Shown here one piece after another: positions 2,026-62,001 of a stretch of DNA of 64,000 nucleotides. Origin of the DNA: Basidiobolus meristosporus CBS 931.73 (taxonomy: Eukaryota; Fungi; Basidiobolomycota); NCBI GenBank assembly GCA_002104905.1, contig MCFE01000419.1, positions 1-64,000 on the forward strand, read 5' to 3'. Numbering within the stretch: position 1 is the stretch's first letter; every line of letters starts with the position of its first letter. A program made the translations under genes and the position numbers. The notes beneath the pieces are model-generated. The model did no database searches and had not been told where the DNA came from. It saw only the letters and a list, made by a program, of their open reading frames with translations.

Positions 2026-3883
2026 GATAAAGAATTGTCTGTAGTCTGGGGATTGTTGGCTTGCCTTGATTACGGGCCATCGATACAATGCCTGTGTGCT
2101 TTATATTGATTGTTCTTTCCATTGCGAGCGACTGTCTCATTGGTTCTCTAGCCAGACAGCTCTGTGAAATGCACTTATACATCATGGCCCAGTCACTTCT
2201 CAACTTGATTGGGTGGTTATTACTAATAACCAGGCACAATTCTAGTTATTTATGCCGGTAAGGTAAAACTAATGACGCGTCTTGGTAATGTTGCTGAGCA
2301 TTAAACGTAGTACACCGACCTAATCTTCCGGTATTTCGGATAGATGACAGGGGCGATATTCCTACTTGGTGTTGATCCTCATACACTTCGGAATCAATAA
2401 TTAATGCACACCTTTTGGGGTTTTCTGGATTCAAGGTGGGATGCCGCACATGCTAGGCTCGTATGGATTAGATAGGGAATCGCTGGAGTGGATGCATCGC
2501 AGCATTTTCTCCTCAATTGTTGACGTCTCAACCAGTACAAGCGCATTGCACTCTGCGTGTACGGCTATCCGAACGGGGATGTGGTACACAGGCACCAAAC
2601 ATCATCATCAATACTATTCCAGACTAGTTTGTGGCTGCTCAACTGACTGTTATCCGACTCTCTGAGGTTGAGATTTCTCTATGCATCAGATCAAGGATTC
2701 GCTGCAGAATGTAGCATGATTGTAGAAGGCGGAGTGGCAAATGATTTACACCTGTTGTTCAGGTGATTGAGCCTGAATATAGGCTTCAAGGCATACTGTG
2801 CACTTCGACACCAACCAGATATGGATCTCCTTCAGTGCAGAGCCCCGCCAAATTGGCTCTGTGGCGTTGAGAATTGCTTGAAACCCTTGATGAACTGGGC
2901 TTGTGTTTGATAATGCTATTACGAATCCCTTTATGTATGTTTCGAACTTTGCAACCACAAACGAGTAGACGTACGTATATAAGGCATACGTACTAAACCA
3001 GTATGCACCTATCCCCGTAGCTTTAAGCCAATTACACATGCTTTCAATGGGCACATGACTCTTTTCGATATCTTTGACATCTGACGAGCTCTGGATCCCA
3101 CTCTCTTTAAAACAATGATCATTACCTTATCTGGTAGGATGCATCATACGACATATACGGGAATGCTGGGGTACATGGACCTCATTGGCCTCCGGCTTGA
3201 AGCGAGTTTGGTGGTTACGAAGGTCGAATGATCAGGGTGACTGTTCATTACGACTAAAGGCATGAGCGATGGATCCGAGGGGTTTTGTTTAACCTAGCTT
3301 ACGTACAAAACCAATCTCGCCTACCCCGTTATTTAGGTATTCATTTCACCTTTGTAGATCAAATTTAACATCAGCTCTAAGCGCCCAATCGCTGTGACGT
3401 ATACTGGCCTACGTTCTCTTGTGGCTTGTCATGGTAGGTTAGCATTGGCTGGACTTCGATGCTGATCTCAGATAAAGGGGACGCTGTTGGTCTAATACAT
3501 GGAGAGCATCCCAGCGCTTTCACCGCAGCAGCAGCTGAGCCAAGCCAGGCACCCTGGATCTGGATGATTATATGCCCATCCCAGGCATTACCTTTTGTGC
3601 CTGTAGTTGGTGCAAATAGTGGACATCGGCGTGCTGATGGATATGACGGTAAAGAGTGCAAGCCCGTCTAGTGTAGAATAACAAGTGAGCAGGTGAAGGT
3701 CACCAAGTGGACATGTAGAATTCCATGATGCCTAATAAATGACGATATGGTGATTGAAGCGTTTCAGAAAGCATGGATGAAACGAATGAAAAGCTCAATA
3801 AAACTGCTGCCCCAACTCAAGTAGCACCTGAGAAAGGTTCCTTGAGCTCTCCTACCTTCAACGTAGATGAGACATCCGCTACC

Positions 3884-4899
3884 ATGATCCATTCAGTAGT
3901 TTATAGTTGCGTACTCATTGTGCTGCTGTGGAGCTCAGCATGTACTGGGCAGTGTTCTCGGGTCCGGGCCAGAAGGGAGATTAGGGAGCTCTCATCTAGA
4001 AGCCGTTTTCGATTCATTGGCGCGATCAATCAACTAAAACGAAACGGCGTTTACGACCGTATCACTCGTTCACACAATCGGGAATTTCGCTTTTTCCACT
4101 GGTTCCCCATGTTCTTTCCTTGGCATCGGCTGTACATCCGACGATTCGAACAAGCACTACAGAATATCGACTCTTCCATCACCTTACCTTACTGGGTATA
4201 GTTATACTTCATCGTAAATGGACACATTGGACTAACTTTGCCTTGCTGCAGGATTGGACCAAAGACGCTGATTCACCCCTTGATTCACCCGTGTTTTCCT
4301 GGTTTGGGGGAGAAGGACGCGAGCGGGATGGCTGTGTGTCTACTGGACCCTTCGCGGGATGGAGAGTGACTACTCCCAATCGACACTGTCTACAACGAGT
4401 GTTTAGGGAGGATTTCCAAGACCTGTATAGCTCATCGGACACCATCAGTAACATTATACAATCGGCCAGTGATTTCCGCGAGTTCCGGAAGATGTTTGAG
4501 AACCACCCTCATGGAGGGATCCATCACTCCATTGGCGGGGATATGGATCAGACCTGGAGCTCCAATGAGTAGGTTGATACGATCTCTTTGGCTGATACAT
4601 TCTCATCGCTTCTCTCTAGCCCATTGTTTTGGATACACCATGCCTTCGTGGATAAAGTATGGTGGAATTGGCAACAGACACACCCAAATGCAAACGGATA
4701 CAACGGAAGAACTTTCAACGGTCGATTAGCCAGCACAAGCGATGCTCTACCCGCGTTAGGACTGAGGGTATCCCAAGTACTGAACATTCACGATCTATGC
4801 TACACTTACTCCAATAGTGAGCAAGATGGTGGGGATGGGGGCGAGGATGATGAGGATGGAGATGAGAATGATCGAGGGGACGGGGACGGGGATGAGTGA
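3884..4899 (+). CDS. Secreted tyrosinase / type-3 copper oxidase, 3 exons
   Basis: Hydrophobic N-terminus MIHSVVYSCVLIVLLWSSACTG; CuA SH...FFHWFPMFFPWHR; LPYW|DW split by intron 4196-4251; CuB HPHGGIH...DPLFWIHHAFVD with intron 4569-4619; acidic D/E/G tail. Confidence 0.93.
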
Positions 4900-8337: not shown

Positions 8338-9899
8338 TCAGCAGCGAAGCTTGAACTGAAGCATAGCCCCAACACCCGCGCCCACGGACAAGTTCTCTAC
8401 CAGGCCAAATCGGACTTTGTCGCCATTTTCCCCAAGCAGATCTCTGACGGTGGAGCAGAGGCGGTGGTGGTACTGATGGTACTGATGGAGCACTCGTCCA
8501 TCAAGGGAGACCGAAACGATCTTCTCTGGATCATTTTGAATGTGTCGTTCAATCAGCCCGGCCAGACAAGCCCCCACCAAGCTCGCAGCCCTAGTACACA
8601 CCTGCTGGCATAGGCATTTGACGATCTCGCGGTCGGAGATGGAGGTGGAGATATTCAATGTATGCTTCAGCAACCTCTTGACAGTCAATAGATCAGGAGA
8701 CTTGTCACTACAAAGAACCCGTTAGCCAAACTCAAGTTAAAATCGCGGCCACCGTAACAAGACGTACCTTTCCATGACAATCATTTGCTCGAAATCAAAG
8801 AGGTAAGGTGTGCTCAAATCGTTTGGTAGCTTTCCACCAAACAGCACCCCTTTCAGCACCATGCTCTCCATAGCTAGGCGCACGATTTCACCGATATACA
8901 TGCCCGAGGTCATCTTTTCAAATCGTTGAAGCCCAGGAAGATGGGACTCCTCGTCTATTTTCAGGTCAAACTTGTTACGTTTGACTTGCGCGCCCTCTAC
9001 GTTGAACCCTCCACATTCGGTATTGAAGATCATCTTGTCGACACCTAGCAGCGACTTCCATTTTGGCAGCTGCTCCAGTGAATCCAAATAGGCAATATTC
9101 GTACCCGAATCAATGAAGCAGCCAATGGTGGTCTGTGAACAAACGGAATAGGCATGCGCAAGAAGACTGGTAATGGTGTCGTTTTGTATGGTCAAAATAT
9201 CTGCCACAATACCCTGAAACCAAACATGAGTCTCTGTGATTGGCCATTACGTCTCATACAAAAGTACCTTTTTCTTGAAAGCCTCGAAAAGAAGCTCCCC
9301 GATATCTCTACTCAATAATCCGGGGACTCTGAAGCCCTTACAGAACGACAGCACTTGGCCTTTGCCCACCCCTTGATGACTAGAGACACAGATGTTAGTT
9401 TGAGGAAAGTGTTCGTTGTTTAGAATGCATCCAACCTTAGAGGAAAAGCCAAGCTTGCGGCGAGTGGAAGGTTCGAGTTTAAAGGAATATGAAGTTCGTT
9501 CAGCAAGAATGCTAGGCAATTCGCGACGAAACTGAAAAGCTTCTTCGCATTTTCTCTGGCGTTGGCATCAACCACGTACTTCTGTAGGGCAAGCTCGTAC
9601 TTACGTCCGCCCACAAACGTGACTGCGCCAACCCCGAGAGTTGCTTCATCTATCATGACCAAGAGGAACTTCCCCTTCTCGTCACCGGTAGGGAGGGACG
9701 AAACATACCCGGGAAGCATAGCTAAACTTGAGCTAGCATTTGAAAGCCCGTTCTTGACCTCCTCGACGAAGTGAGATTTGACTCGCAATAGATCCTCTCG
9801 ATTGATTTTGAAGTCATTCTCGAATACGCCAGTCTTTACCTCAGCTACTGGTAGGGTCGGGGTTGGTACAGGGAGACTCAAATCTATTGACGTAGACAT
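8338..9899 (-). CDS. Hexokinase-like protein with degenerate ATP-binding motifs
   Basis: Hexokinase blocks AMLPGYVSSLPTGDEKG, QNDT, NTECGGF, QRFEKMTSGMYIGEIVRL, CTRAASL; exons joined by GT-AG introns near 9423-9370, 9270-9215 and 8760-8700. Confidence 0.88.
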
Positions 9900-20552: not shown

Positions 20553-23500
20553 ATGCCTGATTCTGAGGGAATTCCAATCCCTGCGAGAAGGGGGACAAAT
20601 GGCTCACTTTCAATTCAAGTACCCAAAAAGCCCTCAGTTGGTAGCTTTGGTAGAAAGGCGGGCGGTGCTTTCAAACGGAATAATGCCGTTTACTCGAAAC
20701 CAGACGAAAATAAAAAGTTCATTTTTGGTCTATTAGAGAAGCTTCAGAAGAGGAAAAGGCCGCCTCCCTTAATGTCTTGGAGTTATCAAACCGAAGAGGG
20801 ATTAACCGTCTCCGAAGAAGTAGTGGATATGGTTATGCAACTAAGAGATGCCCTTGCCATCTGTGATGTAGGCCAGGACCCAAATTCCAACTACAACCAA
20901 TCTTATGAAAACAGTCCAATCGAAGGGTACGTCCGTGAGGATTTACAATATGCAACTCGCACCATTTCCGAATACACGGCACCCGATTTCTATCACACAC
21001 GTAGCTAAAAAGCTAACATACATTCTCCCTACCTTTAGGAGCCCATCAAGTTCTCCGTCTCGCTCTCGTTCTCCTGTGAGCTCACATCGCTCCTTCTCTC
21101 CTTCTCCTTCTCGGAAGAACAAGAAAATGTTCGACATTATGATGACTAGCGATGAAATCTTTCTGGAGAAAATCCTTGATATGGTTTCTGATCTAGTTCA
21201 ATATGAAAGCCGCTATCCAATTGCTGTTCCTAAGCTTACACGACCACCATTTATTCTGCAGTCAGTTTTACTAGACTTGGCGCAGTTGCTAATTGAGCGA
21301 TATCCGCCTAACCCTAGATTTTACTACCAAGTGGGGATTAATTTTGTTACAGCGCTGTATACCTTCAAAGGCTTCATGTACCAGAGGCTTCTACTACTCT
21401 ATTACAACACGATTATACCCTGTTTGCTACCAAGGGGTGCCCCCAAAATTCCGACTAGCGTAAACAGACATAGCAGGAAAGCTTCCACCATGACCCAAGG
21501 TAATAACTTCAGGAATTTACTTACCACAGCCTATATTAAACACAGCCGTTTCTAGAATCTGCCAGTATTACCATTACTCTCCCGGAGCCTTCATCCCCGC
21601 CCGCCATGGCTTCAGACTCTCATTATTTGGGACCACAGTTTACCGATCAGGCTGATGATGTAGGGGAAAGCTGGAGAATGGGGAACAGAGACCGTGGGGC
21701 TCATTATCGTAAACGATCAAGTTTCTCATCCACCTACTCGGATGATTTGGAGCTTCGTAACAGCTATTCTTCAATATGTGAGCCAGTACTACTCGCTTTG
21801 TTGCATAATACTAAGGGTTCGGAGATGGCGCTTGTCAGTCTTTACCATAGCCATCTATTGATCGATTTGATCATCTCAAATAAGCCCGATGTATACATCA
21901 ACATCTTAAATGTGGTCGCTTACGGTAGCCAAGAAGTCCGCTATCGTGCTTTGCAGATTCTCTTTCAATATTGGGAGCATGGAGCTGGCCATCTGCTGAT
22001 TGCTGAACCGTTGCCCAAAATTGATTACAAATCTGATCTGGAGCTGAAGAATAATCAGGAGCTTCGAAATGAACCACAGCTATCGAATGATCCAATAGCC
22101 AGTACAAATTCAAGCGCCTCTGAGGACTGGCACGACCACGAATACTATCCGCATCTGTACCTAGCGGATGGGCCTAGCTCTCACAACTCTGAGCAATCGG
22201 TATGCATTTGTACTCATTGTCTGAATCATATTGATTATTTTGGAGTTCGATGCCATGGGTGCGGAAACAATGTCCATTATTCCTGTTATAACGCTGCCAG
22301 ACTGCAATTCTACGGAGAAGAGTCGGGCATATCCACTTTACAATCAATTCCTTATTCGTATATCACCCCAAACCCTCGAATAGCCTTGTTGAGTCCAAAA
22401 TATCCTGAAGGGACTACTACCGTACGCATTGGTCCTCACAACTATCGACAGGTCAATACATTATGCTTATTAGCCTGTAATATTTGCTTGGATCCTTTAT
22501 GGGGAATCTCACACCAGGGATATCATTGCGAAGGATGTGGTCGCCTAGCACATTTCGAGTGTATACACGCATGCGCAAAACTAGAATGCGGAGAGCAACG
22601 CCAATCTCACACTCTGACAATCACGCAGAAGAGAATACAAGAGCGCTTTGTTTCCCATTATTCGGATATCTTGCTTAAGCCAGGGACTCTGAACGACTAC
22701 AGTTACGAAGAGTTAACACTTATCCTAGATATTCTTAGGCTGCAGAAACAATTGTTTGATAGCTCCATCATGTCCGGCTATGTGGTGTTTGATTTTTCAA
22801 CTGGAGAGTCGACCTCACTGAGTCTTCCTGAATTAGACTCTGCTATCGCGTTGATCGATTCCCAAATCATAGCAACGGTTGCTTCAGGCATCACCAATTC
22901 ATTTATGGGCTACTTTTTTGGATTGAATCGAACAACCGCCCATAGTTTGATATTTTCAAGGGTGCACCTTGTTCAGATGACACTCTTGATGAAGTACCAG
23001 TCTAGAAACGATAGTGCTGGCGGAAGTCTCTTGCAAGTGTATTTACCTGAGCCAGAAGAGGAGCTACTGCAACGGGAGAGTTTAACTTGCCAGGAGGTTG
23101 AAGCCTGGATACGTAAGGAATGCAAATTCCACACCAATCTAGTCGTTAAGCAACTGATTCAATCGATGAGTGATCTGGGATTCTTAGAAGGGTTGTTTAC
23201 ATCACCGGATTATGTAAGTAATATGGGACCGCAAACTAGCAGCCCGAATGATGGAATAGACATATTCAAGAGCAAACATTCCACAGCTGAGATCATCTTC
23301 CCAATTCCTTATGTGATCGAGCCCTCTCCAACTGTAGAAATACTCTTATCAGCAATCGAAACATGTCTATCTGACATAGACCTGTCAGTCAATGAATGCG
23401 GGTTCCTGTTGCTAACGCGTAGATGTTGGCCACACCCACTCATGTCTCATTATTGCCTTGAGCATTTGACAAGATCCGTTCTGTATTGGCTATACGATGA

Positions 23501-26500
23501 GGACAACCGACTATCTGTCATCCATTTGGAGTATACATCCAAGAGATTATCCCCGCCAGGGGTGCGCCAGGTCTTAGAGGAAAAACGACTACTAGCTACC
23601 GTTAATCCAGCCATTGCTAGTAAATATACTTTTGTTCATAGCAGAACTGGTGGCGGTGCCTATGTTACCGCTAGACGTGGGTTAAAGGACAAGTACATAT
23701 ACAGATGGTTAAAGGCCATCCACAATCTAGATCACGAATTATATTCCCGAACAGTCTACCAACAAACAGAAATAGCTGAAAAGAGACTCTGGCAGGTTGC
23801 GCAAGGAGTATTGCCACCAGAAAGTCATGATACAGGGAAAAAAGGCCCCACTGCGTTGTTCAACTCTGGCGCTGCTACGAGCCTGACGAACACTAGCAAA
23901 GGCAATCGTTTTGAGAATTTCCTGGATTGTTTCTTTAGGCTCAAGAATAATGGTCTGGTGTTCTCGTGCTATGACCGGATTCTAGCTTACTGGTTTGAAG
24001 ATGTGCTCAAAGCGTTTGGAAGCTCTAGCAGTTTAACAGATGATCTAACAGAGGGGATATTGACTTCATCGGATATCAAGGCACTTCAAAGACTTCTCAA
24101 TGGAGGAATCAAGGCTGGGCCTGTTTCCAACCTGGAGCAAATTTATAAGAGTGTTGACCCTAATCAGCACCTCGGGGTACCTACTTCTACGACATCGAAA
24201 ACCAATCCCACCAATGGGCCAGAGTATGTAGAGGAGAGCCCTATTACCATGATATATCGTAGATTTATTTTGGCCAAGAACAACTTCGAGAGGATGAAAG
24301 CGTTGGATTGGCTACGTATCCTCATAGCTGGAGGTGCCACAGTTCCCAACTCAGTATTTACAGACTTGTGTCAAATCCTACGCGATTCTGACGCATCATC
24401 GCCAGGAATGGGTTCCCCCGGTCAAGGCAAATCGCCAGACTCATTCTATCGGAGTTCAAATACCCTGACCAATGTATCGGTGTACGTAAGGATACTTCAG
24501 ATGATATGGAGCAACACCAAACACTCAGATTCAGAGACAAGAGAGATTGCGAATATCTTGACAACTATCAACGAGGCCAACTATAATCAGATTTGCCAGG
24601 TGTTCCAAGATTGTGAAGCGAACACAACGCCGGAGCTATATTCACAACAATTTCTAGACAGTGAGATCAACACCATTTCGATCTTTGTCAAGTACAACTT
24701 GGTCTTGATCTTGCATATCTTGGGGTGCCCTTATGATAAAATCGAAGCTGCTGAGATCTTACCAGTCAACAGCGAGTTGTGCTTTCATCATGGTAACTCA
24801 GCGTCAGCCCCTGATACTGGGGCGAATTCCCTTGATAGCGATAAGGCATTCGAGGTCGAGAAAGTCAAAGAGATAATGACATATATTGCCAGCTATTCAG
24901 AGCATTCCAAGTTGAATATTCACGTAGAGCTCATCAAGACGTTGTATCTCATCACTAGCCACGATTTTGAGGACGAAACTGGTCTTACCTCTAAAGAGCT
25001 TTTGCACAGCAAACTGCTAAAAATCATCTGGGAGTTAATGTCACCCAACTACGATTTCTTGGCAGAGTTCTCCTTGTCGGTATTTATGCGAACGATTAAG
25101 CTTTATCCCGAAGAGTTCCATGAATTCATCGAGGGTATTTTTACCTCGGAGGATTGGGAAACTCGGTACAAAAATCTGGACAATGGATTCGGTATATTCT
25201 TCAAGACTACCCGTGATTTTGAGACTTTGCATAGAGATAGTCTTCATTTACTGGGCCCGGTATATAACTACTGTGTAGCTAGCTTATGGGACAAAAACCA
25301 AAACGTGAGTAACAAAGGTTTGACTATAGCTAGATCTATGCGCTCCACCAACCAGCAGAATGCCTTGAAAGCCTGGGAAATGTACTTTGCTGAAGAGAAA
25401 TCGGTAGCAGAGAAGACCAAGATTGTACAGTACATGACAAGATTGAACGCAATATTCCCTGGATTGCAGGTGTTTGATTGGGAGCCTTTAACGTTTACTC
25501 TGCTGAAGTACGATACAAGCGCTGCGGACAAAGCACAGAGGAGATCAAGTGGACTACCTCCGACCAGATCACATCCTCCCGGGAATACCTCGTCAAAGAA
25601 CGGCAATCGAATAGAGATCTCTGCGCCAGCAGGCAAAACTCCCTTAGGTGATATCGAGAATCTGAAGGCATCCTTAATGACTCTGGCATTGCAGATGCTA
25701 GCTAATAGTGTCAAGATATCTTCTTCGGAATTGGTCAGACTAAAGTCAGCGGTGGTCATCCACCTCGGTTTTGAGGATTGTAAGATCGACTGGCAGGCTC
25801 CAAAAAACAAAGAAGTTACATTTGGGGCACTGCCCCATACGGCTGATTGGAACTCACACATTCTGTTGAATGTGTTCGTGCTTGGAATCAAACGTGTGCT
25901 CGACAACGTTCCTCTACCTAAGAAGCCTCACCGGAAACATGAGGAGTCCTCCAATGGGCCTATAGTTAGTGGTATTACTGCGAGCATTGGGCCAGAAATG
26001 CTATCACAATCAAAGTACCACGAGTCTCACACACTTACAGAAGACGGAGACAACTCAGCTGACAACATGGTTCCTGGCACATGGTTTGTGGATGTAATAC
26101 TGAAGATGTTTCTCAGTTGCAACGAGCTCTATGCCTTACCTACTGTCATGTTGAAATCATGGTTAGAGTTGATGCTGATCATTGTCAATAAGGTAAATGA
26201 GGATTTAATATTCGCCTTGAGCTTCTTGCTAACTTTGAGACTCTAGTACGAACTTGACGAAACTGTGATTCCTGTCATGCGTCGTATCACCGAAATCGTG
26301 TCTATCGATATCAACGATGAGAACAAACAGCTTGCCATTGCGGTGTGCTATTCCCTTCTCAAGAAGCCTGGCAAGCTGTCAGCACTTTTGTTATCAAAGC
26401 AAATCATCGCCATGGGAAAGTTGCTGTGCAAGGCACGCGATTCCCCACAGGATATAGCTGCTCTCAAAGCAAAGGAATTCCTGCGAGAGGCTTTCTATAA

Positions 26501-28294
26501 GTTTGCAGATAACTGTTTGTTCCTACTGCTGTTCAAGGTAGGTGGCATAGTGGTTTCGTTCTGGATATGCACTAAAAGCGACTCTTGCAGAATCACGGAG
26601 CGAACACAAGTGGCGAAAACACTTTTGATCTGTTTTATGTCATGGAGACTGTTATGGGGCCGAACGATGTTTGGACCTCTGAAGAGACGGAAGAGTCGCT
26701 TCCGTTACGAGATCTACCCATCAGAGATGTGATGGAGCACTTGATCAGCCAAGAGCTAAATGGACGAGCCTTTTCAACAGTTTTATCTAACTTCAGCACC
26801 TACATTATACAGATACACCATCACTCACTTGGAGACCGACTGCTCAAAGGCATTGGGATATTCCTTGGAAAGTTAGCTGGGTTGCTAGATAAACGCCAAG
26901 ACATCGACGTCAGCCCTGTGCTCGATATGGTAGAAAAGATCTTGAGGGAGCATCCATTTGCCATTGCCACTTTGACGCCATCGCTAAAAACTCTGGTCAA
27001 ACATGCCATCGAGTCATCCTCTGTCAACGTGGAGTCGTTGGCTAGGCTGTTGACTGTCCACAACTTGATAATGTTGGATCAATTAGCAAACAAGTTTTCA
27101 ATTGGGGGCTTTTTGGTGGACTTGATGAAGCTGATTTATACCGGCAAAACGAAGTTGCCCACCAACGGGGCGGCCACACTTGTTCAAGTCATGCTCTGGG
27201 ATTATTACGCTGCCACTCCTGGGAGTGCGCCAGCTAACCTAGCGCTCAACCAGATGCCTCAAGCACCGGCTACCAATGGATATCGCACAATATTCCCCGG
27301 AATCACCGAAATGTTTGATGACATGGTATTATTCTTGGGAGACCCGCTGAAGTTCCAAAAGTACACGGGCGAAGAGTTTAAGATTTCCATTTGGACTAGC
27401 CATTTGATTATCTCTATGCTGGAACCAAGACGCAACAGGTTCCACGAGCTCCTCTGCAAGCAACACAACGATCAGAATCTTCACTTGTTGAATCATATTT
27501 TCCTGGCCATCGCACACATTGGCTCACCAAAACTCTGCACCCTCGCGCTAGAGTTGCAAGACACTGTGACCGAAATAATCTCCCATGGAGTGAAGCTGGC
27601 CGCTTCCCCAGAAACCAATGATGAGCTATATGCAGCGCAAAGAGTGGTTATAAGTCAGACCTTTGTGCTGATCAAGGCTTGGTCCATACTGGTGCATATT
27701 CTCAACGCAGATGCCAAATACTCCACAGCTATCGGCAGAAGTGGAAAGAGACGGGCCCCCACGACGATGACTGCTGAGCGCAAGCTCTGGAATACCATTT
27801 GGCCGATGCTTAGGAAGTCTTTAGTAGCCAGAGTCCACAGCAACAACTCCAACGTAGGTGCTAGTTTCGCAGCACCTGGCTCGTGATTTTAATATATCTG
27901 TGTGTATTTAGGAGCTGCCGCTTGTATGGCGTCATTTCTTCCAGCTGGTTGCTTTCCTTCAAGGGCTTGGCTCAGAGATATTGCTTGTTTACAACCACGA
28001 CTGGCTCTCCATGGTTGAAATGTTTTTCGAAGAGGTATATATCAGAACTATAGAGGAATCATTTACTTGGCTTCATAGCCTCACGCTTTGATCTGCTTGT
28101 AGGAAAAATCGAATGTTGCCGCTCGGGAAATTGAAAATCAAACCAAGCTATTGCTAGACATCGTGCCAACCATACACTTTTCTTCAGAGCTAGAGAGCAT
28201 TGTGGAGGATATATACTCCGAACTACGCCAATCCTCTCATTTCCAGATCTCTCCCGAGGCGAACCAGTTGGCGATCTTCTTTGGTCAGCTTTAG
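20553..28294 (+). CDS. Very large HEAT/ARM-repeat protein with C1-type zinc fingers, UNC79-like (~2,400 aa, ~7 exons)
   Basis: ORF-track pieces join via GT-AG introns (~20928-21038, 21500-21555, 26193-26246, 26538-26590, 27854-27911, 28036-28101). Segments YHSHLL..VYINILNVVAYGSQEVRYRALQILFQYW and DWETRY..WDKNQNVS..FDWE resemble human UNC79 as I recall it. C1-like Cys/His patterns at 22137-22286 and 22437-22589. Confidence 0.8.
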
Positions 28295-36082: not shown

Positions 36083-38588
36083 CTTCATGGGTGATGATAG
36101 AACATTTGACACAGTTAGGGAAGGAACCATCCAAGTGAACCTTGGAAGCAGTGAAGGATGCCACACACTAACCTTCAAAGAAGTACTCTATGTACCAGCA
36201 ATAGCCAAGGACCTACTATCCGTAAGCAAGGCCACAGCAGAAGAACTTGGTTCCAGCTTTGACAATTCTGGATGCAGGATCACTGATCAAAATGGTGCCC
36301 ATATTGCTTTGAGTATCAGAGATCAGAATCTATACAAGTTGAGTTATATTCCATCATATCCAAAAGCCAATATAAGTAACTTAAATGAAGAAACACCAAT
36401 GCTTTGGCACAGGAGATTTGAGCATATCATTCTTGATAATTTGCGCAAAATTATCAAAGATCAGCTAATTTCCGGAGTAAAAGTGATCCCCCAGCTAATT
36501 TGAAGCACTGTGGAGCCTGCATATATGGGAGACAAGCCAGACAACCTCTCAAGAGCTCTGGGTTAATCAAAACAGAAAAAATTAAATCTAATTCACTCAT
36601 ATCTGTGTGGGCCTATGCAAAATTTATCCTTAAGCGGGATGAAGTATTTAATCACTTTTACTGACAATTATACAAGATACACATGGCTTTACTGCATGGA
36701 GAGGAAGGAAGAAGCTCTGTCTAAGTTCAGGGAGTTTAAAGCCATGGTGGAGAGAGAAACTGGTGAAAATATCAATAAAATACCATTTGGCAATGGTGGA
36801 GAATATACCTCAAAACTCTTCATCCACTTCTGCAAAATTCATGGGATAAAGCAAGAGACTACTGTACCATACTCCCCACAGCAAAATGGAGTAGCAGAAT
36901 GTGCTAACAGATCAATAATTGATATGGCAAGATCTATGGTCCATGAACAAAATTATCCTATGATTTTTGGGCAGAATCCATTAGTACTGCTATATACCTT
37001 GAAAATAGGAGTTATAACAGAATGCAAAAGAGGCCCTAGATAGCCCTCAGACAAAGTTTTGGAGATCTGCAATGACTGAAGAATAACAGCCCCTGATGGA
37101 AAACCAAACTTGGGACTTGGTCAAATTACCAATCAACCAAAATTTGATTGGATGCAGATGGGTCTTTAAATCAAAATACAAGGCTGATGGTTCAACTGAA
37201 AGATACAAAGCAAGACTTGTGGCCAAAGAATACTCTCAAACAAAAGGACTTAACTATGCTGAGACATTTGCCCTGATAGCCAAGTTTAATTCCATCAGAT
37301 TAATAATGACTATTGCAGCCAAATATAAGTTTTTTATTCATCAAATGGATGTAAAAACTGCATTTTTGAATGGCAAACTTGATGAGGACATGTATATGGA
37401 CCAGCCTGATGGGTTTGCTGACCAAGATAACCCCCATTTGTTCTTCAAGGTTAAAAAATCTCAATATGGTTGCAAACAATCACCAAGAGCCTGGAACTGT
37501 AAGATAGGATCTGTTTTGGAATCTTTGAGTTGCAAAAGGAGAAAAGCTGACTATAGTATATGCTATAAGCCAGATAGAGCAAATCCAGCTCTATTAGCTC
37601 TATATGTGGATGATCTTATTATAGCCAACAATAATCTAGAAACATTGGAGAATAAATCCAGCCTATCTGAGGAGTTCAAGATCTCCAATCTAGGAGAACT
37701 CAGTTGCTACTTAGGGATTAAGTTATCCGTAGACATAAGAGCCCATACTACCACCCTAAGCCAATCCAAGTATATACAAGATATACTAAAGAAGTACTAA
37801 ATGGAAGACTGTGAACTGGTAGCTACCCCAATAGTGACAAACCTCAACTTGGTCAAAACTCAGCCAAATCAAGAGAGCTTGGTGGCATCTGAAAGCCCTG
37901 ACTTTCCTTATCAATCTATGGCTGGCAGACTGATGTATATAATGCTTGGAACACATCCAGATATCTCATCTTCAGTGGGAGCTGTCAGCCAACATAATCA
38001 GAACTATGGATCTGATCATATTGCAGCAGTTAAGCAGATTTTTAAATACCTACAAGAAACTGCTGATATCTGCCTAAGATACACTTATAAGGATTTAAAA
38101 CAGGATCTTGTGGGATACTCCAATGCTGATTGGGAATAAAATTTGGAAGACAGAAGATCCACCACAGTATACACTTTTCTCTACTGTAAAGGAGCAATTT
38201 CAGGGAATTCAAGAAAGCAACCAACTATAGCACTTTCTGCCACAGTGGCAGAGTATATGACAGCCTGTGAAGATAAAAACAGAGCAATGTGGTTAAGAAA
38301 GCTTTTTTCTGACTTAGGCCTATATCAAAAAATGCCTATTACTTTATTTCAGGATAATCAAGGATGTTTACAATTAGGTAGAAATACAACTTTACATGCT
38401 AGAGCTAAGCACATAGATATAAGACATTATTTCATACGTAAAGCTATAGAGAATAACTTAGTTAGCTTAGTTTACTGTCCTTCAGATGAAATGGTTAAAG
38501 ACATTTTTACCAAACAATTAGCTAGAGACAAGTTTGAATCTCTTAGGTCAAAATTAGGACTAGTCAATATGAGCATTCAGCTGGGGGG

Positions 38589-38938
38589 TGTTGTAAAAAT
38601 TTGTAATTTCACCCAAGTATTCACCTTACTTAGTTGCTTAGATTATTACCTTCAAGTCCTAGAGAGTACTGACCAAATTCCTTGTCAGGATTTACTTGGA
38701 ATATTTTCACCAAAATACCATGTAACCAGTACATGGAAATTCTCAAAGTTGTTCAAACAGCCCCAAACCTTGCACACATGCTCTTGGGACCTTTCTAAGC
38801 CTATTCTATGTGTTTGCTATGGCAAGACCATGCAAAAGCATAAATACTACTTTTACATTCAATAAATCATGAAGTGAAAACCACATAATCTGCTTGTTCT
38901 CCCAGATCACCTCCAATATATCCAAGAATCTTACAACA
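38589..38938 (+). repeat. Copia LTR-B (350 bp, 3' LTR)
   Basis: Preceded by a G-run PPT at 38583-38588; TGTTG...CAACA ends; followed directly by mid-gag sequence GATTTGACC. Confidence 0.9.
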
Positions 38939-49007: not shown

Positions 49008-52000
49008 GCCCTCCGGTCAGGACAATTGAAGTGCGGAAGAAGAAGCGTCAACATGATGCTTCTAGAGAGGAGGTGAAGGAACCTGTAGTAGAGGTTCCGT
49101 CAAAAGGAAAGAGCGCGGAATTAGGTGAAGAAGTACGGAATGAACCTTGGGAAGAAGTGTTAAAGCAAACAAAGAACGCTAGCACATCTTCCCATGGCCT
49201 ATTCCCCATAATGAAGGTACTAGAGCAAACCAAGGCAACCCTCCCAATAACCAATTTACTGGGACTGGCCCCGGCTCTAGTCAAGGAACTGATAGAGGGA
49301 TTGAAGGAGATAACAACCCTCCATGTCAACCAGACGGTCCTGCAAAAAGCAAATAAAGGTACATACGTAAAGGTATGTATAGAGAATAAGGAGATTCTTG
49401 CCCTTATCGACACAGGATCCTCTACGTTGATCATGTCAGAGTCATTAGCAAAACGTCTAAAACTAAATATAGTCCCCAACGACACCATTTGAGTACGGCT
49501 AGCGAATGACCAACTGGATACAACGGTAGGTGTGGTGCCTAATTGCCCCATTTGGCTAGGCAACTTGATAATACGCCAAGATGTTGTGGTCCTACCTGTT
49601 GCAGCCAACGACTTACTCATTGGCAAGAGTTGGTTTATCCAACATAAGATGGATATACTTTACAGTGCATCTGAACTCAGGTGGGATACCAAGAGTATTC
49701 CACTGATTCATATCACCGATGAGAGCGAGGCGCGTAGCAACAGTGTGACAATCAAAGAGGTGAAACCGTTGCAGTCTCCAATCATCACACAAAAGGTGAT
49801 AAAAATACCACCCGCCAGTGAGACGGTGATCTCATTAGAAACACCAATAGCTTATTCAACAAGCGGAAGAATGATAACCGCAGCGAAAGCATCCAAGCAA
49901 CTGGAAGGAATCTTGATCCCTAAAGTATGGATACCACCAAAATTTGAAACGCAAAGCCTGAAATGCTTAGTGGTTAACAACGGTTGACACACGGTGACAT
50001 TGCCTAGAGGAGTGCCATTGTTAAACTTAGAGGAAGTCGACAGAAACGACCAAGGACCACCTCCAAACAAAGAACCAGAAGAAGAACTCCCCAAACTAGA
50101 TGTGGACCCCGGTCTACCACCTACGTTACAAGACAAATTCCTAGAAGGAATACGTCCGCTTGCCCGAGTATTCTCTAAGAACCAAGTAATTGGTCATATA
50201 CCTGGGGTATATCACCAAATCCACCTTGCCAACAAATACCCCATCAAGCAAAAAGCCTATAGGAATTCAAAAATTGACACAGACTATATCAAAGAGACGA
50301 TTGAAACTTTATTAAAAGACAACATCATTACAGAGAGCCAGTCTCCGTGGGCCTCCCCCGTAGTGATAGTCCCAAAGAAAGATGGAAAGCGACGCTTTTG
50401 CATTGACTACTGGAAATTGAACGCCGTCACCCGGAAGGATGTGTATCCGCTACCTCAAATAGACAACCTCTTGGACAGATTAATTGGAGCTAAATATTTT
50501 AGCTCTCTTAACCTAATCTCCGGGTATTGGCAAGTAGAAGTAGCCCCGGAAGATTGACCCAAAACCGCTTTTATAACATTGTTTGGATTATACGAATGGA
50601 ACCGACTACCCTTTGGCTTGTGCAATGCCCCCGCTACATTCCAAAGGATGATCGACAAGGTGCTAGGAAATCTACAATGGAAATGCGCCCTTGTGTATCT
50701 AGACAACATCACAATATATTCCCCCAATGTAGAAGAACATATACACGACGTGCAACGTATCCTGACATCCCTCCTCAAGAACCAACTCAACTACATCCCA
50801 AGAAGTGCCATTTCCTGTATGCAAAATTGTTGTTCCTGGGCCACAAGATCTTGGCAGATGAAATATACCCATCTACGTCACTCCTGAAAGCCGTTCAAAA
50901 TGCACCTGCACCAAAGGACATTAATGCAGTGTTGGGATTCCTAGGATTAGCCGGCTACTATCACCGCTCTGTCAAAAACTTTGCGACAATAGCAGCCCCC
51001 CTATACGAATTGATGCAAAAGGGCCAGTGTTTTGTATGGTCGGAGCCTCAAAAGAGAGCATTAGATCAGCTGAAACATTCCCTGACGTCACCGCCAGTGT
51101 TACAATTTCCCAATTGGGATGCAAGATTTTTTATTAACTGTGATGGAAGCCTCACCGGTATAGGCGCCGTACTGGGACAATACCACCAACCCGGCAAATT
51201 CCACCCAATTGGTTACGTGAGCCGTTTGCTAAACAAACACAAACGCCACTACCCCGTTACTGAGATAGAATGTCTGGCTGTTGTTTATTCAATTAAACAA
51301 TTCCATACATACATACATGGTTGTCAATTCACGATAGTAATGGACCACTGCGCACTGGTCTGGCTGATGAAAACTAAAGACTTTACCGGCCAACTAGCAT
51401 GTCGGGCCCTACAACTACAGCAATACGACTTTGAAATAATTCACCGCGCTGGCAAGAAACACCAGGACGCAGACTTCCTCAGTTGCTATCCCGTTTGCCA
51501 AATACGTGTCAGTGATGAGTACGAGGACGTAATCTGCTTTAAAAAAAAAGGGAGGTATCCCAAACACACTGTTACAAACAAACGGAAGAGAGAATTTCGA
51601 AGGAAATGGTGTCAGTACAAAGTACAAGAATATTGACTATGGTTCCTCCAAGGACAATCCAGAGCCAAGGTACCCCCACTAGCAGCCCGTGAAGAAATCA
51701 TACAAGAAAGACATATGTCATTAGGACACGCTAACCCCCTAACGACATATAAGATGTTAAGAAAAACGTTTTATTGGCGAAAAATGATGACCAACGTTAC
51801 GAATACGTTACAAAGATGCACCACTTGCGAAAGATTCAACCGGAGTCAGAAGATAGGGACAACCGCACCAATACCGGTTGACCTGCCCTTCCACCAAGTA
51901 GGGATTGACTTCGTTGGCCCCTTTATGAAAACAAAGAAAGGAGAACAATACATAATAATTGCTACCGATTATTTCTCAAAGTGGGTAGAAGCCCAAGCCA

Positions 52001-52749
52001 TCCGCAATAAAGATCAGAAGACAACCGCCCAATTCATTCTAGAACACCTCATCTGCCAACACGGATATCCTCAGATACTCCTGTCTGACAATGGTGGTTC
52101 CTTCCTGAACAACACCGTGGCCCACCTATGCGAAATGATGGGCATGAAACAAGTCTTCACGGCCTCATATCACCCCCAGACTAACGGATTAACCAAGAGG
52201 ATGAACCAGACGTGTTGCCGCATACTGGAGAAGCTTCACTGGGAACTTCCCCAATCATGGGCCAAGCTGCTCCCACTGACACTCCTAGCAATGTGCACCA
52301 CACCAAATAAAACAACGGGTTTCTCCCCATATGAAATCCTATATGGACAAAGACCCAAGTGGCAGGAGGAAGCTGGATTGATGATGGAAGGTGTCCCCCT
52401 GACAACACATAACAACTATATAGAAAGGTTGATACACCGTATTGCCCACCTATACATAAAAGTATTCAAAAATGTTGACAAGCACCTTCCCCCTCCACCC
52501 AAAAATGAGAAACTAACAAGACAAAAGTGGAAATCAGGCAATAAGGTGTGGTACAACCAAACCGTTGCAGGCCTCAAGTTCCGCCCACAATTTACACCCC
52601 AATGGATTGGCCCATGCACCATTATCAGTTTGGACCACGGACCAAAGTACACCATCACCCTGAATAATAAGACAATCAGCAACGTAGCGCCAGCCCATCT
52701 GAAACCGTTTCATGATGATCCACCGATCATCACTGAAACCAAAGTGTGA
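48974..52749 (+). pseudogene. Gypsy pol (protease, RT, RNase H, integrase), disrupted
   Basis: ALIDTGS; SPWASPVVIVPKKDG, LPFGLCNAPATFQR, VYLDN (for YLDD); RNase H CDGS..GIGAVL; integrase H..LGH..CTTC, VGIDF, SDNG, YHPQTNG; four in-frame TGAs plus one frameshift near 50790. Confidence 0.95.
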
Positions 52750-52878
52750 TTAAACAATTATCAGGACAAGGATAGAGGAAGACATGGGATACATTCGAAG
52801 TTTATTAGAGGAGATTTTAGTCAATATAGGTACAAATAATATGCGCAAGGGAGTTCGCCCAAAGGGGAGAACAAAAGA

Positions 52879-54048
52879 ATGCATATGGAAAGCGCCGAAG
52901 GAAACAGTTCACCCAAAACTGGCAATACCCCTCCCACTAGCAAGAACCAAGATGATATCAAAAACAAAACCAGCCTGCAAGTGTTAAGAGATATGGTACA
53001 AGCGTTACATACAACAAGAGCCACCTATGAAGAGTCATTTGCCGGAGCAGGCATGCTAATACAAGACACAATCAGAGAGGGACAAGACAAGTTACCCATG
53101 CCGATACAAAGCATGGTGATACTACCCAAGAAGACCGTGTACCAACTAAGAGGAGGTTCCTTGATCATTAAGGAGAAGGATGCCGCGCTGATTCCCATAT
53201 CCATACTGGACACAGTCAGACAGAAGACACAAGGAATCAACTGTCGCGCCCTCACAAGACCTCAAGAGCCCCCCTGTTTTGTTGCATACTTGCCATTAAT
53301 AGGTACCATGGTTGTTGAGGTATACGCAGACCTGGTACAAGCTGCAAGAGCACCAGAAGTAGAACTCCCGATCGAAGGACTCCTCCAAGAAGTTTGCAAA
53401 CATCTTGAACCACATTTCCAAGAAGGAACCATCTTAGAGAAGATACGCAAACAGATTAAATACACCGGCCAGTTAACCCATGCAATCCACCAAGTTGCTG
53501 TGTTACAACTATTACAGTGGTTTACCATTGGACAACTCAGGAATCAGTACAAAGTCCAACTCCAAGAAGCCGAAGAAACCGCCGCGGATTCTGTAGAAAC
53601 CATGAGGCGAGTACAAAAGCGCCTCGATCGCGCCACAGTTTCTACGGAAGAACTACAATACGTCTTGGAAGAAGCAAAAACTCGTTATTGACAACGGGTG
53701 ACTGCCAACCGAGTGTACACCCTCTTCAAAAGGTCCCCCGCCGTCATATTGAACACAAAAAGGACAAGCCCCAATAATGTTTGCAAGATAAAGAAGCAAG
53801 ACTTTATCGCGCTATTGCACCTTTTCTCGTTCTCCAACCCTCCCGAGAAACTTGCCCAGAACCCTATGGTTTGCCAACTATTTGGCTCTGTGGAAAACAT
53901 CCCTCAAGCAACACAGGCCGCACCCCACTCTGCCGCCAAATGGTGTCAGGTACTCGCCCGCAATCCCCTCGTGAGTGACAACCAGCAATGGTACTACGGT
54001 GACTCCCCATGCTCCGTAAACAAAATCAATCCTGGAGAAGCAAGTTAG
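52879..54048 (+). CDS. Gypsy accessory ORF3 (~389 codons, one internal TGA), unknown function
   Basis: The 270-aa and 116-aa ORFs are in the same frame, separated only by TGA 53689-53691 and CAA CGG; they lie between integrase and the 3' LTR. Confidence 0.8.
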
Positions 54049-61116: not shown

Positions 61117-62001
61117 ATGACTTACTCATCTGAATGGTCTTTTCTCATCAATCCCATCACTACCACTGGATTTCCTTTTGACACACTGGAGGAGATCTAT
61201 TCCAAGTACTGTGGACCATCAACCCCAATCTACTCAAGGAGATCCCTTGTTAAGCTTCTCTGCTATTACAAGAACTATTGCCCTACAAGGTTTCATCCCA
61301 CCATCCATGGCAACAAAAGTCCTAGAAGCTCTCATTCCCAGCTGACAGCAATGGAGAACCACCTTGCAGAGGGTATGAATGACTTAGAGCAAGCTTGGAA
61401 TACTAGGTTCAGAAGCTCCAATAGACTTCCATATCCCAGAGTGTTCAGCAACAGGTTCCATATCAGGAGTATTTTGGATACCTTCCCAGTGAGGATTAAC
61501 AGACCTTCTAGAGGGCAGAGGCACTTTTATTCTGGCAAGTACAAGGCACACTGTGTGAAGTTTCAAGCACTGTCTGACATTGAGGGTAACATCATCTGGT
61601 TTAGTGGGCCATTTGCTGGAAGTAGGCATGACAAAGCACTCTGGGTAGAGAATCATCCTGAATTCAGTAGAGGGGAGAAATGTATGGCAGACTTGGCCTA
61701 TATAGGAGAGGATTGTCAGAGATTAGGATGTATTACAGCTTATAGGAAGCCAAGGAATGGTGTGCTTAGCAGGAAGCAGAAGCTCTACAATGAGATATTT
61801 AATCATTTCAGAGTAAGGGTAGAGCACACATTTGGATATCTGAAGAGATTCAGCATATTGGCAGGTAAATACAGAGGAAAGTCATATATAGGAGAAAACA
61901 GCAGAATAGGTAAAATAGTTAAGATACTTATCAATGCACAGTATGTTCATACAAGAAGACATCCACTGAGAGAAATGTGTCTGGAGCATTATGAAGAGTA
62001 A
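61117..62001 (+). CDS. Intact DDE transposase (DDE_Tnp_4 / IS5-ISL2-Harbinger type), 294 aa
   Basis: HTH-like LVKLLCYYKNY; ILDTFPVRINRP..FYSGKYKAHCVKFQ..GSRHD..MADLAYIG..YNEIFNHFRVRVEHTFGYLKRFSIL; no stops. Confidence 0.95.
   Translation: MTYSSEWSFLINPITTTGFPFDTLEEIYSKYCGPSTPIYSRRSLVKLLCYYKNYCPTRFHPTIHGNKSPRSSHSQLTAMENHLAEGMNDLEQAWNTRFRSSNRLPYPRVFSNRFHIRSILDTFPVRINRPSRGQRHFYSGKYKAHCVKFQALSDIEGNIIWFSGPFAGSRHDKALWVENHPEFSRGEKCMADLAYIGEDCQRLGCITAYRKPRNGVLSRKQKLYNEIFNHFRVRVEHTFGYLKRFSILAGKYRGKSYIGENSRIGKIVKILINAQYVHTRRHPLREMCLEHYEE

What the first reader, a model, noticed from the sequence alone, without database searches (positions are those of the whole stretch)
20553..28294. Fungal UNC79-like protein: candidate subunit of a Cch1(NALCN)-Mid1(FAM155)-UNC79/80 channelosome
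Three separate segments match human UNC79 as I recall it. (1) FVTALYTFKGFMYQRLLLLYYNTIIP ~ MISTLATFPPFLHKDIIEYLSTSFLP. (2) YHSHLLIDLIISNKPDVYINILNVVAYGSQEVRYRALQILFQYW ~ YHCQLLECLMKYKQEVWKDLLYVIAYGPSQVKPPAVQMLFHYW. (3) DWETRY..VASLWDKNQNVS..PGLQVFDWE ~ DWKVRF..LTAVEDVNPAVA..IPALSWE. The order and ~2,400-aa size fit. NALCN/FAM155 are established homologues of fungal Cch1/Mid1, but the fungal channel is described mainly from yeasts as a two-component system. A fungal UNC79 would imply an ancestral four-part complex retained in this lineage. The human sequence is from memory.
Basis: partly seen in the sequence, partly recalled or inferred. Interest (0 to 1): 0.8.

Follow-up and report, generated by a model that had tools for sequence, protein, structure and literature searches.

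The report
Basidiobolus UNC79 channel-scaffold gene
This gene of the fungus Basidiobolus meristosporus encodes a 2,446-residue relative of UNC79, the scaffold of the animal NALCN sodium-leak channel; fungal UNC79 was published in 2024-25, so this adds a new fungal lineage and a corrected gene model.

Summary
Window 20553-28294 (+) is one seven-exon gene encoding 2,446 aa. Its last 1,270 aa are identical to the public 'hypothetical protein' ORX89827.1 of Basidiobolus meristosporus CBS 931.73. The first 1,176 aa matched no public protein model.

Alone, the protein matches UNC79 only weakly: Pfam PF14776 scores 24.5 bits against a cut-off of 27. A profile of its fungal family hits human UNC79 at E 3e-28 in three collinear stretches, and nothing else except C1 domains. 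AlphaFold models of both parts match UNC79 chains best (Z 21-23 and 13-15; next-best solenoids 12 and 9).

The family includes Tremella TREMEDRAFT_64098. That protein is in the published fungal UNC79 set, together with C. neoformans CNAG_06362, which co-purifies with Unc80 and Cch1.

It is not new. Boucher et al. 2024 and Senatore et al. 2025 already describe the fungal four-part Cch1/Mid1/Unc79/Unc80 complex. New here are the Basidiobolus (Basidiobolomycota) occurrence, the repaired gene model, and relatives in Mortierellomycota and one Pucciniomycotina species.

I could not test whether UNC80, CCH1 or MID1 are in this genome. The scan noted this same stretch once before, in an overlapping window.

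The parts
20553..20926 (+). Exon 1 (aa 1-125, start codon at 20553)
   Evidence: Frame and donor GTACGT at 20927. The N-terminus aligns with full-length fungal homologues at occupancy 0.66-0.94.
21039..21499 (+). Exon 2 (aa 125-279).
   Evidence: Intron 20927-21038 has a CTAAC branch point. The frame joins correctly. The motif is conserved in fungi but not significant against UNC79.
21556..26192 (+). Exon 3 (aa 279-1824), the 4.6-kb main exon
   Evidence: Continuous ORF. phmmer finds 218 relatives, the best full-length one at E 6.8e-111.
21843..21974 (+).
   Evidence: Pfam PF14776 E 1.2e-5. Human UNC79 residues 139-184 of chain 7sx3_D (185-230 in 7w7g_A), E 0.008. Profile stretch 427-469 against human 188-230, E 7.5e-7.
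22131..22292 (+). First, degenerate C1-like zinc finger (aa 471-524)
   Evidence: Second stretch of the Pfam C1_1 match. Cys/His columns are invariant across the family.
22437..22589 (+). Second C1 domain, PKC C1B-like (aa 573-623)
   Evidence: Pfam C1_1 27.4 bits against a cut-off of 26.5. PKC-delta C1B E 1.5e-5. Model against 7l92_D: Z 9.2, rmsd 1.1 A, 51 residues. All eight Zn ligands plus W22, G23 and Q27 are conserved. Position 11 is Leu, not Pro.
23298..23513 (+). Most conserved block of the fungal family (aa 860-931)
   Evidence: Mean identity 0.42-0.49 to 25 homologues from several phyla, against about 0.2 elsewhere. Function unknown.
24249..24251 (+). Internal Met 1177, where the public gene model ORX89827.1 starts
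   Evidence: P0001 equals model aa 1177-2446 exactly. No protein with about 100% identity covers aa 346-1176.
25152..25484 (+).
   Evidence: Family profile 1325-1531 against human UNC79 909-1119, E 5.8e-9.
26247..26537 (+). Exon 4 (aa 1825-1921)
   Evidence: Intron 26193-26246 (54 nt, CTAAC branch point) removes the in-frame stop. Confirmed by identity to ORX89827.1.
26591..27853 (+). Exon 5 (aa 1922-2342), C-terminal solenoid
   Evidence: Family profile 1736-2209 against human UNC79 2034-2558, E 5.5e-11.
27912..28034 (+). Exon 6 (aa 2343-2383)
28103..28294 (+). Exon 7 (aa 2384-2446) and stop codon at 28292-28294

Best explanation
The gene encodes the Basidiobolus meristosporus orthologue of UNC79. 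It is a 2,446-aa cytosolic all-helical HEAT/armadillo solenoid. Shown here: the gene structure, membership of the fungal Unc79 family, homology to human UNC79 along the whole length, and a fungus-specific tandem C1 zinc-finger insertion after the N-terminal UNC-79 signature. Inferred from the human cryo-EM structures and from C. neoformans genetics and AP-MS: it pairs head-to-tail with an Unc80 partner, and the pair docks on the cytosolic side of the Cch1 (NALCN-type) channel with its Mid1 (FAM155-type) subunit. In that position it would regulate Ca2+ entry upstream of calcineurin. The C1 pair may hold the scaffold at the membrane or sense lipid; that is speculation.
For: Gene model. The C-terminal 1,270 aa are identical to ORX89827.1 of B. 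meristosporus CBS 931.73. The 78,215-nt contig length fits the 14,215 offset plus the 64,000-base window. Family: 218 relatives; full-length members of about 2,000-3,500 aa (most 2,000-2,600) align end to end with the model. Link to animals: profile A1 against PDB gives human UNC79 at E 3.4e-28 in three collinear stretches; the only other hits are C1 domains. Structure: the AF2 model of aa 1177-2376 has pLDDT 81.5. Its four best Foldseek hits are all UNC79 chains, E 2.6e-16 to 2e-9 and TMq 0.44-0.50; the next hit is at E 2e-7 with TMq 0.16. VIA-align gives Z 20.6-22.9 over 921-958 residues, next 12.3. The model of aa 280-1200 (pLDDT 75.7) gives UNC79 at Z 13.2-14.6, rmsd 2.8-3.5 A over 253-261 residues, mapping to human residues about 170-690; the next solenoid is at 9.0. 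Link to the experimentally studied protein: P0078 is TREMEDRAFT_64098. It is in Senatore et al.'s fungal UNC79 set and tree together with CNAG_06362. CNAG_06362 carries a PKC-like DAG-binding domain, co-purifies with Unc80 and Cch1, and is itself enriched in the Mid1 purification (PMC11526942). Tree: Basidiobolus sits with the Glomeromycotina/Mucoromycotina sequences, apart from Basidiomycota, as vertical descent predicts.
Against: The single sequence falls below Pfam's cut-off for PF14776 (24.5 against 27 bits). Its C-terminal half alone finds no UNC79 by phmmer. Foldseek finds nothing significant for the aa 280-1200 model (best E 0.06; UNC79 at E 0.13). Only VIA-align singles out UNC79 there, and Z 13-15 is near the range that helical repeats can reach by chance. 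No RNA run was listed, so exons 1-3 have no transcript support. UNC80, CCH1 and MID1 were not examined in this genome. CCH1 is known only from unchecked first-reader notes.
Confidence: 0.8

Rival explanations
1. It is a generic HEAT/armadillo repeat protein, and the UNC79 resemblance is a chance local match plus a common helical-repeat shape.
For: Single-sequence matches are weak. Helical repeats give middling structural scores with many proteins (notes).
Against: The family profile hits UNC79 at E 3.4e-28 in three ordered stretches and hits no other HEAT protein. UNC79 chains lead the next solenoid by about 9 orders of magnitude in Foldseek E-value and by 8 or more Z units over more than 900 aligned residues.
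Confidence: 0.03
2. It is the UNC80 partner, or an undifferentiated UNC79/UNC80-like paralogue, rather than UNC79.
For: Both subunits are giant helical solenoids of similar size that lie antiparallel in the complex (PMC12412391).
Against: No UNC80 chain appears among the HMMER hits at E <= 0.01 or in the top 50 Foldseek or VIA rows for the C-terminal model. The one other chain of a channelosome entry, 7sx3_E (not UNC79; probably UNC80), ranks 34th at E 0.25 for the N-terminal model. The C1 domain marks fungal Unc79 (CNAG_06362), not Unc80.
Confidence: 0.02
3. It is a true UNC79 homologue that in Basidiobolus works apart from Cch1, for example as a C1-domain lipid-signalling scaffold, because the partner genes are lost or diverged.
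For: Partner genes were not checked here. Many fungi run Cch1-Mid1 without Unc79/80, so the coupling is not obligatory (PMC12412391). The conserved C1 pair hints at an added function.
Against: In published surveys UNC79 and UNC80 co-occur in the same fungal clades. The C. neoformans orthologue is physically and genetically tied to Cch1/Mid1. First-reader notes report a CCH1 gene in this genome (unchecked).
Confidence: 0.1
4. The locus is two genes or a decaying gene. Only the C-terminal 1,270-aa product, as in the public annotation, is made.
For: The public model starts at Met 1177. A related locus in assembly GCA_025716815.1 is also annotated as two adjacent genes of 953 and 1,240 aa. No RNA data were available.
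Against: The reading frame runs unbroken through Met 1177 inside a 4.6-kb exon. The upstream 1,176 aa align with full-length homologues and keep every invariant Cys/His and signature residue. Most relatives are annotated as single proteins of 2,000-2,600 aa (Mortierellomycota up to about 3,500).
Confidence: 0.05

Closest known systems
Cryptococcus neoformans Unc79 (CNAG_06362, 2,326 aa; Boucher et al. 2024, PMC11526942) and the fungal UNC79 set of Senatore et al. 2025 (PMC12412391)
   Same: Same family. Tremellomycete members (Tremella P0078, Kwoniella P0071, C. depauperatus P0099) are hit at E 1e-31 to 1e-40. Size, helical solenoid and the PKC-like C1 domain after the N-terminal signature are the same. 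TREMEDRAFT_64098 is in the published set.
   Different: Only about 20-23% identical to the basidiomycete members. It comes from Basidiobolomycota, a phylum absent from the published sampling. No experimental data exist for this species.
Human UNC79 in the NALCN-FAM155A-UNC79-UNC80 channelosome (PDB 7SX3, 7SX4, 7W7G, 7WJI)
   Same: Collinear sequence homology at profile level. The overall solenoid shape superposes over more than 900 residues and over the N-terminal 170-690 region.
   Different: About 15-18% identity in structural alignments. The human protein shows no match to the C1 region. The partner channel in fungi is the Ca2+ channel Cch1, not a Na+ leak channel (PMC12412391).
Protein kinase C C1B domain (for example PKC-delta, PDB 1PTQ and 7L92)
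   Same: HX12CX2CX13CX2CX4HX2C zinc pattern, with the final Cys one residue further on (8 rather than 7 residues after the preceding Cys). W22-G23 and Q27-G28 are kept. rmsd 1.1 A over 51 residues, 35% identity.
   Different: Pro11 of ligand-binding C1 domains is Leu here and in 35 of 39 family members. Position 20 is Pro. Diacylglycerol binding is untested. The domain is embedded in a giant scaffold, not a kinase.

Membership tests
UNC79 (NALCN/Cch1 channelosome subunit) | Sequence homology to animal UNC79 that is collinear along the protein | tested here: met
   The profile of the fungal family, with this protein as first row, hits human UNC79 at E 3.4e-28. The N-terminal, middle and C-terminal stretches are in order.
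UNC79 (NALCN/Cch1 channelosome subunit) | Single-sequence score above the Pfam PF14776 (UNC-79) gathering cut-off | tested here: inconclusive
   24.5 bits, E 1.2e-5, against a cut-off of 27. The close relatives P0002 and P0003 score 25.2 and 22.7. The published fungal UNC79s could not be found by BLAST from animal queries, so sequence-only detection across this distance is known to be weak.
UNC79 (NALCN/Cch1 channelosome subunit) | Giant all-helical HEAT/armadillo solenoid whose shape matches UNC79 better than other solenoids or UNC80 | tested here: met
   Models with pLDDT 81.5 and 75.7. UNC79 chains rank first with Z 20.6-22.9 (next 12.3) and Z 13.2-14.6 (next solenoid 9.0). No UNC80 chain is near the top.
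UNC79 (NALCN/Cch1 channelosome subunit) | Same family as the experimentally characterised fungal Unc79 (CNAG_06362) | tested here: met
   Hits include TREMEDRAFT_64098 (P0078) and a C. depauperatus protein. TREMEDRAFT_64098 groups with CNAG_06362 in the published UNC79 tree. The tree is consistent with vertical descent.
UNC79 (NALCN/Cch1 channelosome subunit) | An UNC80 partner gene in the same genome, and an antiparallel heterodimer with it | not testable with these tools
   Only this 64-kb window was readable, and no UNC80 sequence could be brought in by reference. No scan note mentions UNC80.
UNC79 (NALCN/Cch1 channelosome subunit) | Association with Cch1/NALCN and Mid1/FAM155 | not testable with these tools
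   Two unchecked first-reader notes report a CCH1 gene elsewhere in this genome. No note mentions MID1. No biochemistry exists.
Typical (diacylglycerol/phorbol-ester-binding) C1 domain | Zinc-ligand pattern and C1 fold | tested here: met
   Pfam C1_1 27.4 bits against a cut-off of 26.5. All eight ligands are invariant in 39-40 sequences. rmsd 1.1 A to PKC C1B.
Typical (diacylglycerol/phorbol-ester-binding) C1 domain | Ligand-groove residues Pro11, Gly23 and Gln27 with hydrophobic loop tips (from general knowledge of PKC C1 domains) | tested here: inconclusive
   Gly23, Gln27, Trp22 and Leu21 are kept and the loops are hydrophobic without Arg. Pro11 is Leu. Binding cannot be predicted from this.

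The most novel reading that the evidence does not exclude
The invariant tandem C1 module makes fungal Unc79 a membrane-lipid (diacylglycerol) sensing arm that couples phospholipase C signalling to Cch1-Mid1 gating. In addition, the four-part channelosome was kept far more widely in fungi than published. Basidiobolomycota, Mortierellomycota, Calcarisporiellomycota and at least one Pucciniomycotina species would then carry it, so fewer independent losses are needed.
Probability: 0.2. Interest if true: 0.6.

Novelty: new member of a known kind. Interest (0 to 1): 0.3.

Why it matters
The big idea, that fungi keep UNC79/UNC80 and so have an animal-like four-part channel complex, is already in print (PMC11526942, PMC12412391). 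This locus adds smaller things.

- It is the first UNC79 noted in Basidiobolus (Basidiobolomycota). That lineage was not in the published sampling and its position among early fungi is debated.
- It shows why such genes get missed. The public model holds only the C-terminal half, which on its own finds no UNC79 and lacks the diagnostic N-terminal signature and the C1 domains.
- The relatives found along the way include a Pucciniomycotina species, although the published summary lists 'Pucciniomycota' among the lineages that lost UNC79/UNC80. This suggests the published pattern of losses is partly a sampling artefact.

The corrected full-length sequence would improve fungal UNC79 profiles and comparisons of subunit co-occurrence.

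Tried and rejected
- The word-index protein search with exon 3 found nothing. With the family alignment it returned only one protein because of candidate limits. Neither result says anything about relatives; the exhaustive search found 218.
- phmmer of the C-terminal half against PDB found no UNC79.
- The segment-1 profile against PDB gave only noise: TRRAP and PDE5 at E about 1.
- Foldseek with the aa 280-1200 model found nothing significant. VIA-align was needed.
- The RNA run search listed none, so read laying was not used and the 5' exons lack transcript support.
- A scan-note search for UNC80, MID1 or large HEAT proteins in this genome found nothing useful.
- The organism of assembly GCA_025716815.1 (locus L001) could not be found by paper search.
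- I considered and rejected the generic HEAT protein, UNC80 and split-gene readings (see the rival explanations).
- I did not type in UNC80, Cch1 or Mid1 sequences from the paper's supplements. Long sequences have no reference here, so that step was left out.
Full report
**What is there.** Window 20553-28294 on the + strand holds a chain of open frames. They join through six GT..AG introns of 53-112 nt, three of them with clear CTAAC-type branch points, into one 7,341-nt coding sequence of 2,446 aa. The exons are 20553-20926, 21039-21499, 21556-26192, 26247-26537, 26591-27853, 27912-28034 and 28103-28294.

**Organism and public annotation.** An exhaustive HMMER search with aa 346-1545 found 218 relatives. 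The top one, P0001, is 100% identical. It is ORX89827.1, 'hypothetical protein K493DRAFT_64806' of Basidiobolus meristosporus CBS 931.73, on a 78,215-nt contig. That length equals the 14,215 offset given for an overlapping window plus 64,000. NCBI places the strain in the phylum Basidiobolomycota.

P0001 equals aa 1177-2446 of my model residue for residue. This independently confirms introns 3-6. It also shows that the public model starts at an internal Met inside the 4.6-kb exon 3. No other near-identical protein covers aa 346-1176, so the N-terminal 1,176 aa appear to be unannotated. The whole spliced model aligns end to end with full-length homologues of about 2,000-3,500 aa (most 2,000-2,600).

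**Check of the three segments.**
- Segment 2 (aa 375-418) matches Pfam UNC-79 PF14776 at E 1.2e-5 and 24.5 bits, below the 27-bit cut-off. It matches human UNC79 chains in the PDB at E about 0.008.
- Segment 3 (aa 1478-1588) is not detectable from the single sequence.
- Segment 1 (aa 227-252) is a conserved fungal motif. A profile of that region alone finds no UNC79 at E <= 10, so this pairing remains unsupported.

**Is it UNC79?** I built a profile from 25 sequences: exon 3 plus 24 full-length fungal relatives. It hits the three human UNC79 PDB sequences at E 3.4e-28 to 8.7e-27. There are three significant stretches in the same order in both proteins:
- profile 427-469 against human 188-230;
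- profile 1325-1531 against human 909-1119;
- profile 1736-2209 against human 2034-2558.

The only other hits are C1 domains. No UNC80 and no other HEAT family appears.

The AlphaFold2 model of aa 1177-2376 has pLDDT 81.5 and pTM 0.64. Foldseek ranks the four UNC79 chains first, at E 2.6e-16 to 2e-9 and TMq 0.44-0.50. The next hits (SF3B1, CAND1) are at E 2e-7 with TMq of about 0.16 or less. VIA-align gives Z 20.6-22.9 with 921-958 aligned residues, mapping to human residues about 615-2580; the next best is 12.3.

The model of aa 280-1200 has pLDDT 75.7. Foldseek finds nothing significant for it. VIA-align puts UNC79 first at Z 13.2-14.6, rmsd 2.8-3.5 A over 253-261 residues, mapping to human residues about 170-690. 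The next solenoid is at 9.0. Together the two models map in order onto almost the whole human protein.

**Link to the studied fungal protein.** The relatives include Tremella mesenterica TREMEDRAFT_64098 (P0078), Kwoniella and Cryptococcus depauperatus proteins. Many are named 'Phorbol-ester/DAG-type domain-containing protein'. TREMEDRAFT_64098 is listed among the fungal UNC79 homologues of Senatore et al. 2025 and groups with C. neoformans CNAG_06362 in their tree.

Boucher et al. 2024 named CNAG_06362 Unc79 and noted its PKC-like diacylglycerol-binding domain. The knockout clusters phenotypically with cch1 and mid1. By affinity purification its top partner is Unc80 and Cch1 is also enriched, and Unc79 is itself recovered in the Mid1 purification.

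**Domain architecture.** After the N-terminal UNC-79 signature there is a tandem C1 insertion: a degenerate finger at aa 471-524 and a PKC C1B-like finger at aa 573-623. All zinc ligands are invariant across the family, and W22, G23 and Q27 are kept. The second finger superposes on PKC-delta C1B at rmsd 1.1 A. Pro11 of ligand-binding C1 domains is Leu here, so lipid binding is open. The best-conserved block of the family is aa 860-931, at about 45% identity across phyla. Its role is unknown.

**Mechanism.** Shown here: homology, fold and architecture. Inferred from the human structures and the C. neoformans data: the protein pairs antiparallel with Unc80 under the Cch1-Mid1 channel and tunes Ca2+ entry upstream of calcineurin. 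Not tested: whether UNC80, CCH1 and MID1 are present in this genome. Only unchecked scan notes mention CCH1. Expression is also untested, because no RNA run was listed.

**Novelty.** [quoted passage not shown] Basidiobolus appears neither in the text nor in the 33 supplementary files. This is therefore a new member in an unsampled lineage, with a corrected gene model.

A maximum-likelihood tree puts it on a long branch with Glomeromycotina and Mucoromycotina sequences, apart from Basidiomycota. That fits vertical inheritance.

The same search also found relatives in Mortierellomycota, Calcarisporiellomycota, Dacrymycetes and the Pucciniomycotina yeast Meredithblackwellia. This is wider than the published distribution.

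**Other remarks.** No contig here looked human, and no reads tool was used.

Noticed in passing
window 20553-24248: The public annotation of B. meristosporus (ORX89827.1) covers only aa 1177-2446 of this gene. The N-terminal 1,176 aa, which hold the UNC-79 signature and both C1 fingers, match no public protein model.
   Followed up: yes
proteins P0014, P0016, P0021, P0037, P0038, P0057, P0118, P0002, P0015: Full-length relatives occur in Meredithblackwellia eburnea (Pucciniomycotina), six Mortierellomycota genera (2,078-3,518 aa as annotated, most over 2,600), Calcarisporiella and Dacryopinax. The published survey reported UNC79 only in agaricomycetes, tremellomycetes, glomeromycetes and mucoromycetes, and listed 'Pucciniomycota' as having lost it.
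   Followed up: partly
L001:124-7665 (GCA_025716815.1, contig JAIXMN010000029.1): In another assembly the homologous locus is annotated as two adjacent genes: 953 aa with a faint UNC-79 match plus C1_1, and 1,240 aa, only 16 nt apart. It looks like the same kind of split or mis-annotation. The organism is not identified.
   Followed up: partly
window 23298-23513: A 72-aa block (aa 860-931) is by far the best conserved part of the fungal family, at about 45% mean identity across phyla. HMMER does not align it to human UNC79. It is a candidate partner-binding surface.
   Followed up: no
window 8338-9899 (-) and 3773-4572 (+): The neighbouring genes are a multi-exon hexokinase (Pfam Hexokinase_1 and Hexokinase_2) and a tyrosinase-domain gene.
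   Followed up: no
window 36087-38865 (+), 50527-53691 (+), 61117-62001 (+): The downstream third of the window is rich in transposons. There is a Ty1/copia-type element (gag-pre-integrase, rve, RVT_2), a Ty3/gypsy-type element (RT-RNase H, integrase) and a DDE_Tnp_4 (Harbinger/PIF-like) transposase ORF.
   Followed up: no
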